Of a stretch of 64,000 nucleotides of DNA, positions 4,111 to 37,541 are shown piece by piece; the first letter of the stretch is position 1, and each line of letters begins with the position of its first letter. The notes beneath the pieces were generated by a model. The model ran no database searches and was not told the origin of the DNA. It saw only the letters and a list, made by a program, of their open reading frames with translations. The position numbers and the translations under genes were made by a program. The DNA comes from Podarcis liolepis (Eukaryota), in assembly GCA_965112155.1 (NCBI GenBank), contig OZ218103.1; one strand, given 5' to 3'.

Positions 4111-4278
4111 TAGGAACATAAGAAGATGCCTTGTACTGGCTCAGACCATTGCTCTATCTAGCTAACTGCTTGCACTGACTGGCAGCAGCTCTTCAAGGTT
4201 TCCTGGAGGTGCCAGGAATTGAACCTGGGACCTTCTGCATGTAAAGCACATGCTCTACCACTGAGCTATGGCCCTTCC
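4111..4278 (-). mobile_element. tRNA-derived SINE with CR1-like 3' tail
   Basis: Minus strand GGAAGGGCCATAGCTCAGTGGTAGAGC (A box) ... GGTTCAATTCC (B box) ... tail ending CTTATGTTCCTA; same family at 22106, 31154, 47204 and 56788. Confidence 0.85.
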
Positions 4279-11193: not shown

Positions 11194-12361
<1,168 letters not shown>

Positions 12362-14765
12362 TAAGTGCTTCACTTCTCTTTCCTGACCAAAGGTCACATG
12401 AGCTGATTGGTGGGATGAGGTTCCAAGCTTGTTTCCTTTTCTGAAACATAGACCTAAGCAGCTATTGAGGTCTGTTTCTTTTTCTTTCAATGCTGTCTTG
12501 TGCACAACCTCCAACATTTATATGTACAGAACGTCATGATGGCTTTGCAGCAGTGACATCTGGTCCATATTGTTGTTCAAAATGAGGTCTTAGTTGTTGC
12601 TGTTGTTTTAACTCTGGCATTACTTGCAATCTATCTTGCTTCCAGTTTTGGCATAAGGAGCAGGGATCTGTAAGAATCTTCATTTTTGCGTTGGTTTAAA
12701 GAATCCATTCTTTCTTTGAACTTATCTGGGTGTTTTTCACATTGCCTTCAACAGGAGTTTAAATGTTATTAAAGTCAAATAAGGATTGAAATGAAAGAAG
12801 AGGGTCTGACCCTGGCAGAAGGTGAAAAAAGGGGGGAGTGGGAAATAACTGAATGGTACAATGAACTTTTTTTTTAAAAAAAAAAATTGAATTAAAGTCA
12901 AGCAGATAAATAGTTTGAGCATCTGCTCTTTTTCAAAGATGTCAGCTTAAGCACAGCAGTACTTACAATTGTATTGATGATCCGGCCTGAACTCTTCAGA
13001 TGAATGGCAGTATACAAATTTAATAAATAAATAAATGACAATGTTAATCATAATCTTCAACAGCAGCAACAACCATCTTTCAGGCTATATCCTTACAGTC
13101 AACTCAAGCGGACCTTCTAGGACTTTTAGATCTTCTCCAGATCTTTAGAACATACTCCATTTGTTTGTTGCCCATCTTATGAGCACAGATATAAAAGCAC
13201 AGGAATGTCTGCTTGGGATGAGTATGAGAAGACAAATGCTAAACATGTAGTGTTAGCAATGAACAAAAGTCCTGGCGATCCATGCTTAACATTTTTCATG
13301 CATTAACAAATGCCTCTGAGGAACAGTGTATGCTTGAAACATTTTAAACTGTTCTTTTTAAAAAAAGGAAAAAGAAAGCATGGTGAATTTGGCTCTTGAG
13401 ACATTTAGATTGTTCCTTCACCCCTGTTTCAATCCAGATAGGTATTGAAAACAATGTATTGAGATATGGTAAGATTTTAGAGAACAGAACTGGATTATTA
13501 ACAGGAAATGGCCCAGTCTGCATCAACAGCTCATGGGTCAGTGAAGATCTGTGGCCATTATAACATCATGTTAACAACACAACACCGAATTATGCATTGA
13601 ATCAGTGCTTCTTGAATCAGTACTCAAAGTTACGTAGTACTGACACCTCCCTCCCCCCAATATTAAAAGTGTAGCACTTACTGTAATACTTTCATGGTGA
13701 GTACTGGCACCTTTTTTTTTTTCTTATAAAAAGGCACCCCATTGAACCCATGGAAATAGATGGGCTTGAGTGTGTTATACACCTGCTGTTGTATTGTGGT
13801 TCATGTGTCTAAATAGCTCAGACAGGTGCAAATCTAGTCAACAATAGGGAATTCATAGCCCCTGGGACATTTCTACTTGTTCCCAAACTTCACAGGAATC
13901 CTGGTGAATTGACAGCTTTTAAAAACAAAAACAACTTTAACATTTCAGGTGGGTGATTTAGTTGCTTAAAACCTGGGGGCACCTTAAGAGAAACACATTT
14001 TCTCTCTCCCCCATATGAGATTGTAGTAACCATTTGTTGCTTCTCTACCAGCTATTTAAAGCTATCCAGCCTTCCATGAGCTCCACATGTAACAAAATTT
14101 AAATCTTGTATACAAGACTAAAAAATGTAAACAGTTTTCAGTCAAGTGTGCTTCTGCCTGGGAATTCATGTGGCTTTTGGTTTTTAAGCATTTAGCAATT
14201 GCTTTCATGATGCTTGAACACTAGACTTAGTATAGCGTTGCTGTTGCTTTGAAAGGCTTTCATACTGTGCATGAACATGCAAGCTATCACAGGTTAAAAC
14301 TTTTAAAACGTACTTCGTTTTTCAAAAAAACGTGAGCAATTGTAACTTGGGTATTTTCTGTCCTCTTGGAAACATATGAAAACATTAATAAAGCTTAGGA
14401 GATCTACTTGAATGAATGGTAAACTTCTAACCGGTGGTTTTCAATCAGTGTTGGAATGTCACCATATTATGATCTAGGCATTGAGTCATCTCTAAAATAC
14501 CTAGTTCTCAGCTTCTTTAGTGATAACAGGTCAAAAGCAGCCAAATGATTCAGCTAGGGTGGGAGCGGGACAGAAAAAAGATCAACACACACATAAATTC
14601 AAGTGATGGTTATAAAAGGATGTTTTGAAGGAGGGTGGTGTTTAAAAGGATCTATTATGACACTGGTGTAAAATGATGGGGAAATTTGATAGTGTGTATA
14701 AATCTCCACTTTACTTATTGTATGTTTCTAACAAAATGGGACACATCAAAAATTATTTACAAATT

Positions 14766-22105: not shown

Positions 22106-22282
22106 GGAAGGGCCATAGCTTAGTGGTAAAGCATCTGTTTTGCATGCAAAAGGTCTTGGGTCCATTCCCAAACATCTCCGGGTGGGGCTGAGGAAAATTC
22201 CCTGTCTGAAACCCTGGAGAACTGCTGCCAGTCAGTGTACTAGATGAATCAGTTGTCGGACTTGGAATAAAGCAGCTTCCTA
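22106..22282 (+). mobile_element. tRNA-derived SINE (same family as 4111-4278)
   Basis: GGAAGGGCCATAGCTTAGTGGTAAAGCATCTG...TGCATGCAAAAGGTC...CTGCTGCCAGTCAGTGTA...AGCAGCTTCCTA. Confidence 0.85.
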
Positions 22283-26421: not shown

Positions 26422-26659
26422 TGCTAAATAAATAGTATTCTAAGTGCTAAAACCAGATGGCACTGCAACTGCCATGGTATCTATCCATCTGTGTGGCATT
26501 CATTTATATAATTTTCCAACTGTAGTCTGAAATGATAACAGTCCTGGAAGATTATCACTTGGGGAGCCTCTCACGATCATTGAACAACACGTTACTAGAT
26601 CCTGGTGACTGTTTAGCTAGAGATCATGGAGCTGATCTACCAATACTTGTTTTGCAAGA

Positions 26660-26839
26660 TAAAAAAAAATTCCTTCCAGTAGCACCTTAAAGACCAACTA
26701 AGTTAGTTCTTGGTATGAGCTTTCATGTGCATGCACACGAAAGCTCATACCAAGAACTAACTTAGTTGGTCTTTAAGATGCTACTGGAAGGAATTTTTTT
26801 ATTTTGACTATGGCAGACCAACACAGCTACCTATCTGTA
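26660..26839 (+). mobile_element. Penelope-like inverted-repeat insertion collapsed to a spacerless palindrome
   Basis: ~70-bp arms (26660-26801) centred on TGTGCATGCACA; 3' tag GACTATGGCAGACCAACACAGCTACCTATCT; 15-bp TSD ACTTGTTTTGCAAGA at 26645-26659 and 26840-26854. Confidence 0.85.
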
Positions 26840-27479
26840 ACTTGTTTTGCAAGAGTTTGCATACATGTGGAATAGAAATGAAATATATGCTCATGAGTTT
26901 TTCCCTGACTAGGACAAAAAATGTGAGTTTGCCTTGAAGTAAACCTGGCCAGAGTCTAGGACTTTGCAATGTAATGTTAATAGTATGGGATATACAGGTG
27001 ATATCTCTCAATGAGAGGTACTTGTTAGAAGGTTCCTTCATGATACAGAGAAGGGAACAGAGGGCATGCCTTTTCTCTGTTTAACTAACAATGAAGTAAT
27101 CTAGATCTCTGTGCGAAAAAAGAAATTACCGTAACTGGTTTTGAGTCAGGATGTGAGACAGACTGGAGAGGCACACAGAGGGCTGAGCTGAGTTTTGGGG
27201 AGTCTGTAAGCCAGCCTCCCCATCCTATTGCCCTCCAGTTCTTTTAGATTACAACTCCCATCAGCTTCAGCCAGCATGAGTAGTAGTATTTCATTCCTAT
27301 CCCACCTTTCCCCCATAGAGCTAAAGGCTGAGTCTATGCTTCTTCCACCCCACCAGTTTTGTCTTCACCCCAAGAGTTAGGTTAGGCTGAGAGATAGTGA
27401 CTGATCAAGGCCATTTAAGTGAGATTTGTGGTTGAATGAGTATCTGAACCTGGGTATCTCTGCCCCTTGTTCTGCATTT

Positions 27480-36030: not shown

Positions 36031-36421
36031 CTTGATATTTGTTTAAAGATCATTCCATGTATATTTAAGATTCTGCATTTGTGGAGACAGCAGTGTAAGA
36101 TTTATCCCACTATCAGTTGTTCTGATGTTTTTGTAAGATGATAAGATGCAGATACCTAGGATAGTTTCTTGCTGGCATTGAGTTGCTTAGAATGAGCCCA
36201 TTAAAGTCAATATGGCTTAGGTTAACCATGACTAACCAGTCCCATTTCCCCCCACTTTGTTCACTCTAAGCATGAGTAGGTCTGGATTCAATCCTGAGTT
36301 CTGAGGTGAAATCAGAGGTGGAGGGTGAGGTTGTGAGGAAATGAATTCTAGCTAGTCAACAGCCATAGATTTATAACTAGAAAGGTGGATTAATACAACA
36401 AACAAGTACATTATTTTCTGT

Positions 36422-36639
36422 CAAAATAAAAAAATTCCTTCCAGTAGCACCTTAAAGACCAACTAAGTTAGTTCTTGGTATGAGCTTTCGTGTGCATGCA
36501 CACTTCAGATATCTGGTATCTGAAGAAGTGTGCATGCACACGAAAGCTCATACCAAGAACTAACTTAGTTGGTCTTTAAGGTGCTACTGGAAGGAATTTT
36601 TTTATTTTGACTATGGCAGACCAACACGGCTACCTATCT
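36422..36639 (+). mobile_element. Penelope-like inverted-repeat insertion carrying a hammerhead ribozyme
   Basis: Near-perfect ~90-bp arms spanning 36420-36611; 3' tag GACTATGGCAGACCAACACGGCTACCTATCT; 12-bp TSD ATTATTTTCTGT at 36410-36421 and 36640-36651. Confidence 0.88.
36514..36555 (+). ncRNA. Minimal type I hammerhead ribozyme motif (Penelope-associated)
   Basis: UGGUAU-CUGAAGA-A-GUGUG(CAUG)CACAC-GAAA-GC-UC/AUACCA: 6-bp stem I, CUGANGA and GAAA cores, stem II, palindromic AGCU in place of stem III, predicted cleavage after C36549. Confidence 0.75.
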
Positions 36640-36752
36640 ATTATTTTCTGTAAATGTGTTGGGGTTGTTTTAAGGCTCAATGATCACATTGAGTTGACAT
36701 ACTGCTTAGCATACATCAAATTATGGCTTTTGTTATGACCTATGGCCTAAAC

Positions 36753-36888
36753 CAGGCATCGCCAAACTCGGCTCTCCAGATATTTTGGGACTACAACTCC
36801 CATCATCCCTAGCTAAGAGGATCAGTGATCAGGGATGATGGGAACTGTAGTCCCAAAACATCTGGAGGAGCAAGTTCGGGGATGCCTG
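36753..36888. mobile_element. hAT-type palindromic MITE (young)
   Basis: TIR CAGGCATC/GATGCCTG; perfect 8-bp TSD GCCTAAAC (36745-36752, 36889-36896); internal GGGACTACA/TGTAGTCCC. Confidence 0.92.
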
Positions 36889-37541
36889 GCCTAAACAAAT
36901 AAATTCTGTTCTCTCACAAAAGTTTTCACAGAGCTACTGAATCATTTTTTTCACAGCCAAGGGCTGATCACTCTCCTGAGCTTCCCTACAAATTGCCTAA
37001 TGTTATAAAGGAATGTACTAACAACCAATGCATCTGCACAGGTTGGATTGGAATGAAAGGAGCAGTGCTTGGTGAATTGAGCCCAATATTTCTAAATCTC
37101 TCGAAATACCTAAGGTTATCCCTGAGCACAATTTCAATTATAAGGATGTGGAGTCAGAGGAGGTGACTCCATAGGAAGAGGATGATTTAGCCTTCTTTCA
37201 AAATTAATTTACAATTCCCCCGTAAAATATTGTAAAATAAGGTACGTTCAATATCATTCTGCCAGGAAGACTGTATATCTCCAGGTCCCACCAAAATGTA
37301 TTATTGAATAGAAATTATGCTGTAACTGAAAGATCCCTGTAGAGTTTGATGAAGTTCTGCAGCTGGCATGCCTATTTCATATTTGCTCATAAATTAGAGT
37401 TCCTTTTATAAATAGTTTATAAAGAAGAAAAATGTGTGTGTGTGTAAAAATATTGATACTGTAGTAGAATTGCAAAACCATTGGTGAGAAAGTAATGTAT
37501 TGCTTAATGTTTACACTATCTTTCCACCAAGGGTGCAGTCC

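What the first reader, a model, noticed from the sequence alone, without database searches (positions are those of the whole stretch)
36514..36555. Intact minimal hammerhead ribozyme on the sense strand of the KCND3 intron
Seen: the + strand reads UGGUAU CUGAAGA A GUGUGCAUGCACAC GAAA GC UC AUACCA. UGGUAU pairs with AUACCA (6-bp stem I). CUGANGA and GAAA are the hammerhead cores, stem II is a perfect palindrome, and there is one extra A after A9. Stem III is reduced to self-complementary AGCU, too short to close within one molecule. Known: Penelope-like elements carry such minimal type I hammerheads, which cleave as dimers via the palindromic stem III. Inference: KCND3 pre-mRNA may contain a latent self-cleavage site (after C36549) that needs a partner RNA. 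Related copies elsewhere in the genome could supply that partner in trans, if the family is abundant.
Basis: partly seen in the sequence, partly recalled or inferred. Interest (0 to 1): 0.8.

Follow-up and report, generated by a model that had tools for sequence, protein, structure and literature searches.

The report
Penelope-type hammerhead motif in fold-back insertion
The hammerhead-ribozyme motif is really there, but it is the standard minimal motif carried by a very abundant lizard Penelope-like jumping element, sits in a recent 218-base fold-back insertion absent from three related lizards, and is locked in a long hairpin, so it is an ordinary repeat copy rather than a regulator of the KCND3 gene.

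Summary
Observation confirmed. 36514-36555 (+) reads exactly as described and is the only match in the window to a minimal type I hammerhead descriptor (0.003 expected per shuffled window).

Interpretation partly supported. The motif has every published hallmark of the "min-HHR" of metazoan Penelope-like elements (PLEs): an unpaired base after A9, G10.1-C11.1, a long helix II, no helix III loop and a palindromic AGCU. It lies in the sense arm of a 218-bp insertion (36422-36639) with a 12-bp target-site duplication, an inverted 5'-truncated partner arm and a 28-29-nt tail on one side only. That is the textbook PLE layout. It is sense to KCND3, in intron 1.

A latent cleavage site in KCND3 RNA is unlikely, for five reasons:
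- The motif is buried in a roughly 92-bp, almost perfect hairpin (-165 kcal/mol; helix I pairing probability 0).
- Two of the six helix I pairs come from junction filler; the family has four.
- Contigs from three related organisms show a precise empty site.
- Family RNA reads show no pile-up of ends at the cut site.
- Published PLE hammerheads cut poorly even as dimers.

The scan has flagged the same kind of insertion many times elsewhere in this genome. It is a known kind and of low interest.

The parts
36410..36421 (.). Left target-site duplication, ATTATTTTCTGT. The last 2 nt could also belong to the inverted arm, so the duplication is 10-12 bp.
   Evidence: (D1). The empty-site contigs, table 8, carry one copy only.
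36422..36510 (-). Inverted 5'-truncated arm. It is the reverse complement of the family 3' region and has no tail. Read on the - strand it gives AUCUGAAGUGUG..., which is 3 nt (AAG) shorter than the sense arm. It therefore has no A9, no extra base and no helix I 5' strand, so there is no intact hammerhead on the - strand.
   Evidence: I1, 87 nt, 100% complementary; alignment A2; no descriptor hit on the - strand.
36511..36515 (+). Junction filler ATCTG between the two arms.
   Evidence: table 7: loose ends before 36516 in all four runs read ...CTTCTGTTTCAGT..
36516..36639 (+). Sense 5'-truncated arm of the family (hammerhead, about 60 nt, then tail).
36514..36555 (+). Minimal type I hammerhead motif: helix I 36514-19/36550-55; C3-A9 36520-26; unpaired A 36527; helix II 36528-32/36537-41 with loop CAUG; G12-A14 36542-44; A15.1 G15.2 C16.2 U16.1 36545-48; C17 36549. 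The predicted cut lies between 36549 and 36550.
   Evidence: Features compared with PMC4209133.
36612..36639 (+). One-sided 'tail' (TATGGCAGACCAACACGGCTACCTATCT), present only after the sense arm. It contains the AC-rich CCAACAC (36621-27) in a weak stem-loop.
   Evidence: both inverted arms stop before it; small stem-loop. Tail concept from PMC8557442 and PMC11167929.
36640..36651 (.). Right target-site duplication, ATTATTTTCTGT.
26659..26840 (+). Second copy of the same family (182 bp), also sense to KCND3, flanked by the 13-bp duplication CTTGTTTTGCAAG (26646-58 / 26841-53). The fold-back axis lies in the middle of the helix II palindrome (26731|26732). It has no CUGANGA box and no helix I 5' strand. 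It keeps only GAAAGCUC-AUACCA (26739-52), the substrate half. The tail is 4 nt longer (…TATCTGTAA).
11255..12360 (+). KCND3 (Kv4.3) coding exon 1, which sets the gene strand. The GT donor is at 12361.
   Evidence: Shal-type, BTB_2, Ion_trans; 824 bits to Kv4.3 against 719 to Kv4.2.

Best explanation
This is a dead-on-arrival mini-insertion of a very abundant lizard family that is either a Penelope-like element or is mobilised by one. The hammerhead is the family's own minimal ribozyme motif, brought along as cargo.

Shown:
- A 218-bp insert with a 10-12-bp target duplication landed in KCND3 intron 1.
- It consists of a sense 5'-truncated 3' end (hammerhead, about 60 nt, then a 28-29-nt tail) and an inverted 5'-truncated copy that lacks the tail.
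- A second copy 10 kb upstream has the same plan with a different junction.
- The orthologous site is empty in three related organisms.

Inferred mechanism:
- As shown in vitro for the Anolis Poseidon element, the element's endonuclease cuts both target strands at AT-rich DNA, and both 3' ends prime reverse transcription at two neighbouring internal start sites on the RNA.
- The two convergent cDNAs stop early and are joined. In the 26.7-kb copy the join is in the helix II palindrome. Here it is made through 5 nt of filler.
- This yields a fold-back with a tail on one side only.

In the element's own life cycle the motif is thought to process multimeric element RNA as a dimer, helped by the element's protein. 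In the KCND3 pre-mRNA this copy most likely does nothing as a ribozyme. It folds into a hairpin of about 92 bp of double-stranded RNA, a plausible ADAR substrate, and is removed with the intron.
For: Motif:
- The motif and all min-HHR hallmarks are present (definition in PMC4209133).

Insertion structure:
- Perfect 87-nt inverted arms and the duplication.
- The four-arm alignment shows the tail only on the sense arms.
- The second copy has its own 13-bp duplication.
- The published PLE structure is 5' truncation, an adjacent inverted 5'-truncated copy, and a 30-40-bp tail at one end (PMC8557442).
- Cleavage and extension of both strands, internal RT start in an AC-rich stem-loop, and the tail lying between two start sites are published (PMC11167929).
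- Poseidon_Ac has the same hammerhead layout, with the RT start 111-118 nt after A9. Here CCAACAC lies 95 nt after A9.

Age and abundance:
- Single contigs from organisms B, C and F join 36409 directly to 36640 (table 8).
- Summed word depth on the element is 4e5-1e6 against 14 on the flanks in X4 (table 2). With 2 copies per 64 kb, this suggests roughly 1e4-1e5 copies.
- No variant at 5% or more is listed inside 36516-36556, whereas 36557, 36561, 36576 and 36604 vary (table 3).

Folding and RNA:
- The hairpin dominates the fold.
- No RNA end pile-up is seen (table 6).
- RNA-only, strand-specific A>G changes at the family UAG site (36567 and its mirror 36464) suggest that family RNA is double-stranded in vivo (table 3).
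Against: - No reverse transcriptase or GIY-YIG ORF lies in the window, and no longer family copy could be fetched. The link to PLEs therefore rests on structure and the motif, not on the enzyme.
- Unlike Poseidon_Ac, all three frames after the hammerhead hit stops within 60 nt, so the family may be non-autonomous.
- The variant table hid 34 rows, so conservation of the core is indicative only.
- The RNA run is from a species that lacks this insertion and shows no reads on the unique flanks. Nothing was measured on this locus's own transcript.
- Catalysis was not and cannot be tested here.
- Dual-strand priming is inferred from the end structure and from one in vitro study.
Confidence: 0.85

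Rival explanations
1. One reading: the motif is a latent self-cleavage site in KCND3 pre-mRNA. Abundant family transcripts would pair with it through the AGCU helix III and helix I, and cut the intron after C36549.
For: - The core is intact.
- It is in sense orientation in intron 1.
- The family is abundant and transcribed at about 300 reads depth per direction.
- Dimer cleavage of such motifs is published (PMC4209133; Lünse et al. 2017 as cited in PMC6765202).
Against: - The motif is sequestered in a -160 to -165 kcal/mol fold-back, with helix I probability 0.
- Antisense family RNA is as abundant as sense and would pair over more than 100 nt rather than 14-16 bp.
- The isolated dimer prefers an inactive extended duplex by about 20 kcal/mol.
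- No read-end pile-up is seen at the cut site (table 6). None was found in Anolis either (PMC11167929).
- In vitro activity is low even as dimers, and protein dependence is reported (PMC4209133, PMC11167929).
- The insertion is absent in three related taxa. Cutting an intron would in any case have little effect on the mRNA.
Confidence: 0.04
2. The family is not the 3' end of an autonomous PLE. It would be a short non-autonomous element (SINE-like, or a monomeric retrozyme derivative) that mimics the PLE hammerhead plus RT-start module and is mobilised in trans. This rival concerns family identity only, not what the copy does here.
For: - Stops occur in all three frames within 60 nt after the hammerhead in both copies, whereas the Poseidon_Ac ORF starts inside its hammerhead.
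- The copy number is enormous.
- A preprint derives animal retrozymes from PLE terminal repeats (10.64898/2026.07.22.740005).
Against: - RNA and DNA loose ends show that the family continues upstream of 36516 and downstream of 36639 in other copies (table 7), so longer members exist.
- There is no tandem arrangement here.
- Helix III has no loop, unlike canonical retrozyme hammerheads.
Confidence: 0.35
3. The roughly 92-bp hairpin is the functional unit: an intronic precursor of small RNAs (miRNA or endo-siRNA), or an ADAR target, with the hammerhead incidental.
For: - There are generic miRNA-precursor model hits (mir-559 at 60 bits, MIR1222 at 52 bits).
- The hairpin is extremely stable.
- Family RNA shows editing-like A>G changes.
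Against: - All Rfam hits are far below gathering scores (60 against 95, and so on) and reflect hairpin shape only.
- The insertion is young and absent in relatives.
- No small-RNA data were examined.
Confidence: 0.06
4. The motif is a chance look-alike with no relation to hammerhead ribozymes.
For: Rfam hammerhead models do not score it.
Against: - The descriptor expectation is 0.003 per window.
- The motif carries four features not needed for a chance match that are published hallmarks of PLE min-HHRs (PMC4209133).
- It sits in a PLE-type insertion and is invariant across a huge family.
Confidence: 0.01

Closest known systems
min-HHR of metazoan Penelope-like elements (Cervera & de la Peña 2014, PMC4209133; Lünse, Weinberg & Breaker 2017, cited in PMC6765202)
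   Same: - Type I topology, with the CUGANGA and GAAA boxes.
- An unpaired base between A9 and G10.1, and the G10.1-C11.1 pair.
- A long helix II and a short open helix I.
- No helix III loop, with palindromic 15.2-16.2.
- Found mostly as single motifs in truncated copies, sometimes as pairs on opposite strands.
- Reported in reptiles.
   Different: - Helix II is a perfect 14-nt palindrome here.
- This copy's helix I is lengthened from 4 to 6 bp by junction filler.
- Activity is untested.
Poseidon_Ac (PAc) of Anolis carolinensis (PMC11167929)
   Same: - A lizard PLE with the same hammerhead layout: CUGAGGA, U, long helix II, GAAA, CG, UC.
- An AC-rich RT start region about 100 nt downstream.
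- A tail between two RT start sites.
- AT-rich target with ATT, and both target strands extended.
   Different: - The PAc ORF starts at A9-U-G10.1 and runs through the following sequence; here every frame is closed within 60 nt.
- No sequence similarity beyond the core was tested.
- PAc copies are mostly tandem, whereas this one is a fold-back mini-copy.
Complex tandem/inverted PLE insertions with a one-sided tail (Evgen'ev & Arkhipova 2005; Craig et al. 2021, PMC8557442)
   Same: 5' truncation, an adjacent inverted 5'-truncated copy, a tail of about 30 bp at one end, and a target duplication.
   Different: It is extremely short (218 bp and 182 bp) with no ORF at all.
Animal non-LTR retrozymes, newt satellite 2 and Schistosoma Sm-alpha hammerheads (PMC7229834; 10.64898/2026.07.22.740005)
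   Same: Type I hammerheads with a weak, palindromic helix III that act as dimers, and a proposed relation to PLE terminal repeats.
   Different: - Those are head-to-tail tandem repeats expressed as circular RNAs.
- They have a 1-2-bp helix III plus loop, and loop I/II contacts.
- Here there is no tandem, no loops and no circular-RNA evidence.
Conserved intronic hammerheads of amniotes (HH9/HH10; de la Peña & García-Robles 2010; from my own knowledge)
   Same: A hammerhead on the sense strand of an intron.
   Different: Those fold stably as monomers and are conserved at orthologous sites across amniotes. This one cannot close helix III alone and is missing from related lizards.

Membership tests
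Hammerhead ribozyme, minimal type I (PLE min-HHR) | Core boxes C3-U4-G5-A6-N7-G8-A9 and G12-A13-A14, the A15.1-U16.1 pair, and H17 | tested here: met
   CUGAAGA, GAAA, U36548, C36549.
Hammerhead ribozyme, minimal type I (PLE min-HHR) | Helix II closed by G10.1-C11.1, longer than the canonical 4 bp | tested here: met
   GUGUG/CACAC with loop CAUG (5 bp). G36528 pairs with C36541.
Hammerhead ribozyme, minimal type I (PLE min-HHR) | [quoted passage not shown] | tested here: met
   A36527. Feature listed in PMC4209133.
Hammerhead ribozyme, minimal type I (PLE min-HHR) | No helix III loop, with palindromic 15.2-16.2 so that helix III forms only between two molecules | tested here: met
   AGCU at 36545-48. 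The double-hammerhead dimer can be drawn without pseudoknots and scores -20.9 kcal/mol.
Hammerhead ribozyme, minimal type I (PLE min-HHR) | Short open helix I (4-6 bp) | tested here: met
   6 bp in this copy and 4 bp in the family (table 7).
Hammerhead ribozyme, minimal type I (PLE min-HHR) | Match to curated hammerhead covariance models (Rfam clan) | tested here: not met
   No hammerhead family at gathering score or at E<=10. Those models expect a helix III hairpin.
Hammerhead ribozyme, minimal type I (PLE min-HHR) | Site-specific self-cleavage | not testable with these tools
   The only indirect evidence is that no read-end pile-up appears at 36549/50 in family RNA (table 6).
Penelope-like element insertion | 5'-truncated copy with an adjacent inverted 5'-truncated copy | tested here: met
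   in both copies in the window.
Penelope-like element insertion | A tail of about 30-40 bp at one end only | tested here: met
   28-29 nt (36612-36639), and 32-33 nt in the 26.7-kb copy. It is absent from both inverted arms.
Penelope-like element insertion | Target-site duplication at an AT-rich target | tested here: met
   ATTATTTTCTGT and CTTGTTTTGCAAG. The empty site is seen in three organisms.
Penelope-like element insertion | Family encodes, or is flanked by, a telomerase-like RT plus GIY-YIG endonuclease ORF | tested here: inconclusive
   No such domain in 18 of the window's 24 ORFs of 110 aa or more that were scanned. Longer family members could not be fetched. Another follow-up of this scan reports a Poseidon-type element in the same genome, which I did not check.
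Animal non-LTR retrozyme | Head-to-tail tandem repeats, each with a hammerhead | tested here: not met
   No direct repeat of the unit. There is a single intact motif.
Animal non-LTR retrozyme | Canonical type I hammerhead with a helix III stem-loop and loop I/II contacts | tested here: not met
   No helix III loop and an open helix I.

The most novel reading that the evidence does not exclude
Sense-strand family transcripts, which are abundant, could act as trans partners. Intronic min-HHR copies such as this one would then be cut in the nucleus whenever the fold-back is opened, for example by helicases or after ADAR editing. That would give tens of thousands of PLE relics a collective effect on pre-mRNA stability in lizards.
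Probability: 0.03. Interest if true: 0.7.

Novelty: new member of a known kind. Interest (0 to 1): 0.15.

Why it matters
As a ribozyme in KCND3 it most likely does not matter. It is one of roughly 1e4-1e5 copies of a known kind of motif, it is young, it is absent from relatives, and it is structurally locked.

Its modest value lies elsewhere. The two mini-copies in the window each have a target duplication, a tail on one arm only and a different junction, and one has a precise empty site in related species. They are clean natural footprints of the two-strand, internal-start reverse transcription so far shown only in vitro for the Anolis Poseidon element. They also indicate that the family was recently active in this lizard lineage. 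The editing-like changes in family RNA suggest that such fold-backs are a large source of double-stranded RNA in lizard cells.

Tried and rejected
- Rfam hammerhead models give no hit at gathering score or at E<=10. I treat this as a limit of models that need a helix III hairpin, not as evidence against the motif.
- The Rfam miRNA-type hits are all far below gathering score, so I reject them as generic hairpin matches.
- I searched for more copies outside the window. Exact patterns in metagenome contigs and viral contigs found nothing.
- I searched the window for the upstream family sequence seen in reads and found nothing.
- I scanned 18 of the 24 ORFs of 110 aa or more against Pfam for RT or GIY-YIG. 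Only KCND3 exon 1 matched.
- A look-up of earlier findings by sequence was blank.
- Lünse et al. 2017 (PMC5785218) is not held, so I cite it through the review PMC6765202.
- I considered the 26.7-kb copy as an in-cis partner. It carries only the substrate half (no CUGANGA), so at best it could be cut by this copy's core and could not help cut 36549. It is also locked in its own fold-back.
- I considered that the ATG in loop II (36534) starts an ORF, as in Poseidon_Ac. It stops after 9 codons.
- I built no consensus of the element and repaired nothing.

Full report
**1.
In hammerhead numbering:
- C3-A9 is 36520-26, and an unpaired A sits at 36527.
- Helix II is 36528-41. It is a perfect 14-nt palindrome that folds as 5 bp plus a CAUG loop.
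- G12-A14 is 36542-44.
- A15.1-G15.2-C16.2-U16.1 is 36545-48, and C17 is 36549.
- The helix I 3' strand is 36550-55.

I wrote a descriptor for a minimal type I hammerhead and ran it on both strands. It finds only this site. In 300 dinucleotide-preserving shuffles of the window it found a mean of 0.003 hits, and none in a stricter form.

Rfam 15 gives no hammerhead hit at gathering score, or even at E<=10 on a 281-nt slice. Those models expect a helix III hairpin, which this motif lacks by design.

**2. The motif sits in a transposon insertion.**
It is the right arm of a perfect 87-nt inverted repeat, 36420-36506 against 36525-36611. The whole 218-bp block 36422-36639 is flanked by a 12-bp direct repeat, ATTATTTTCTGT. 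After the right arm come 28-29 nt (…TATGGCAGACCAACACGGCTACCTATCT) that have no mirror on the left.

A second copy lies at 26659-26840, on the same strand:
- It has its own 13-bp duplication, CTTGTTTTGCAAG.
- It has the same two arms, and the same tail on the sense arm only.
- Its fold-back axis falls in the centre of the helix II palindrome, so it has no CUGANGA box and no helix I 5' strand.

In the 36-kb copy the inverted arm, read on the - strand, is 3 nt shorter in the AAGAAG run. It therefore lacks A9 and the extra base. Only one of the four arms in the window carries an intact core.

**3. Reads from related organisms.**
I laid 36150-36900 on contigs of three DNA runs (organisms B, C and F) and on raw RNA reads of organism C.
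- *Empty site.* In each DNA run one contig (570-578 nt) covers 36150-36409 and continues directly at 36640. The flanks show 2-3% divergence. This is a precise empty site with a single copy of the duplicated 12-mer. The insertion is therefore real, recent and specific to the window's lineage. I could not test the window's own species further.
- *Abundance.* Summed word depth on the element is 4e5-1e6 against 14 on the unique flanks in X4. The tool warns that this is not a copy number. Taken with two copies in 64 kb, it suggests on the order of 1e4-1e5 copies.
- *Helix I.* All four runs show loose ends before 36516 that agree on ...CTTCTGTTTCAGT. The family therefore continues upstream differently from the window. 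Bases 36511-36515 (ATCTG) are junction filler, and the family helix I is 4 bp (GUAU/AUAC).
- *Other fold-backs.* Many joints connect various left-arm positions to 36516/17. These are other fold-back copies with other junction points.
- *Core conservation.* No variant at 5% or more is listed within 36516-36556. Positions 36557, 36561, 36576 and 36604 vary at 20-50%, as do their mirror positions. Since 34 rows were hidden, core conservation is indicative only.
- *RNA depth.* Family RNA is present at about 300 reads per direction. There is none on the unique flanks.
- *RNA ends.* The tool finds no place where many molecules begin or end, so there is no cut-site signature at 36549/50.

**4. Comparison with what is known.**
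Cervera & de la Peña 2014 (PMC4209133) defined the "min-HHR" of metazoan Penelope-like elements (PLEs). Its features are:
- no helix III loop, with palindromic 15.2-16.2;
- a conserved extra nucleotide between 9 and 10.1;
- G10.1-C11.1, a long helix II and a short helix I;
- mostly single motifs in truncated copies, sometimes pairs on opposite strands, present in reptiles.

They detected no cleavage as a monomer and only low cleavage as dimers. Every structural feature is met here.

Craig et al. 2021 (PMC8557442) describe PLE insertions as 5'-truncated, often with an inverted 5'-truncated copy adjacent, and with a 30-40-bp tail at one end only. This is the layout of both copies in the window.

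The 2024 study of Anolis Poseidon_Ac (PMC11167929) reports that:
- the element's protein cleaves and extends both target strands at AT-rich (ATT) DNA;
- reverse transcription starts internally at two neighbouring sites in an AC-rich stem-loop 111-118 nt into the ORF;
- the tail is the stretch between those two sites;
- the hammerhead cuts only in the presence of the protein;
- no RNA-seq reads end at the cut site.

The Poseidon_Ac sequence in that paper's supplement has the same hammerhead layout: CUGAGGA, U, long helix II, GAAA, CG, UC. In the window, CCAACAC lies 95 nt after A9, in a weak stem-loop.

One difference stands out. In Poseidon_Ac the ORF starts inside the hammerhead. Here all three frames close within 60 nt. 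The window also holds no RT or endonuclease ORF among the 18 largest ORFs scanned. The family may therefore be a non-autonomous passenger of a PLE. I could not fetch longer members.

**5. Gene context.**
ORF 11255-12364 (+) is KCND3 exon 1:
- Pfam finds the Shal-type N-terminus, BTB_2 and Ion_trans domains.
- It scores 824 bits to Kv4.3 residues 1-369 against 719 bits to Kv4.2.
- The exon ends …TMTTLG followed by GTAAGT at 12361.

Peptide motifs I recalled for the next exon are not found on the + strand of the window (this is a lead from memory, not a test).

**6. What the RNA would do.**
The 242-nt stretch folds into one hairpin at -165.2 kcal/mol, with z = -26.5. Forcing helices I and II of the hammerhead costs about 51 kcal/mol (-109.0 against -160.5). 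The ensemble probability of any helix I pair is 0. The antisense arm is transcribed first, so there is no kinetic window either.

Two isolated 42-mers prefer an extended duplex (-40.4) to the double hammerhead (-20.9), because helix II is a palindrome. Antisense family RNA is about as abundant as sense RNA.

The RNA reads also carry RNA-only, strand-specific A>G changes at a UAG site:
- 36567 changes in 81/321 reads in one direction and 0/301 in the other, with a DNA share of 0.1%.
- Its mirror, 36464, changes in 21/41 against 0/51.

This looks like A-to-I editing of double-stranded family RNA. A few highly expressed copies carrying G are the alternative.

**7. Verdict.**
The proposal of a latent cleavage site in KCND3 pre-mRNA is not supported. 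The best reading is a recent, dead-on-arrival fold-back mini-insertion whose ribozyme motif is cargo. In the intron it forms a long hairpin.

The scan has noted the same kind of insertion many times elsewhere in this genome. Another follow-up reached the same conclusion at a different locus. I took those notes as leads only.

Noticed in passing
window 36567, 36464, 36453 (and 36765-36766 in the neighbouring repeat): The changes are RNA-only and strand-specific, of the A>G type, in family reads of run X23. 36567 changes in 81/321 against 0/301 reads. Its mirror 36464 shows T>C in 21/41 against 0/51. 36453 shows T>C in 21/50 against 0/70. The DNA share is 0.1% or less. 36567 is the A of a UAG. 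This looks like A-to-I editing of double-stranded repeat RNA. The alternative is a few highly expressed copies that carry G.
   Followed up: partly
window 26659-26840: This is a second fold-back mini-copy of the same family, with a 13-bp target duplication. Its inversion axis lies exactly in the centre of the helix II palindrome. That suggests the hairpin in the RNA or cDNA guides where the two cDNAs join.
   Followed up: partly
family sequence just 5' of window 36516 (table 7): In other copies the hammerhead's helix I is preceded by ...CTTCTGTTTCAG|T, which looks like a pyrimidine tract plus AG 3' splice site. In Drosophila virilis Penelope the intron ends at the 5' end of helix I (PMC4209133). 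Whether this lizard family has such an intron is untested.
   Followed up: no
window 36516-36550 (tables 5 and 5c, run X12): A few DNA contigs of organism F join 36550 or 36545 back to 36516, with 3-9 letters between. These are rare tandem-like duplications of the roughly 38-nt hammerhead unit.
   Followed up: no
window 36752-36810 / 36831-36889: A second inverted repeat has 59-nt arms that are 85% complementary, 110 nt downstream of the insertion. It belongs to another extremely abundant repeat (word depth about 1.2e6 in X4) that is also transcribed in both directions.
   Followed up: no
window 4204-4275 (-) and 22116-22171 (+): Two tRNA-model hits were found (44.7 and 31.7 bits). The first has a mismatched acceptor stem and the second is partial. 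They are probably tRNA-derived SINE heads rather than tRNA genes.
   Followed up: no
window 11255-12360 (+): KCND3 (Kv4.3) coding exon 1 is complete from the start codon to the GT donor at 12361.
   Followed up: yes
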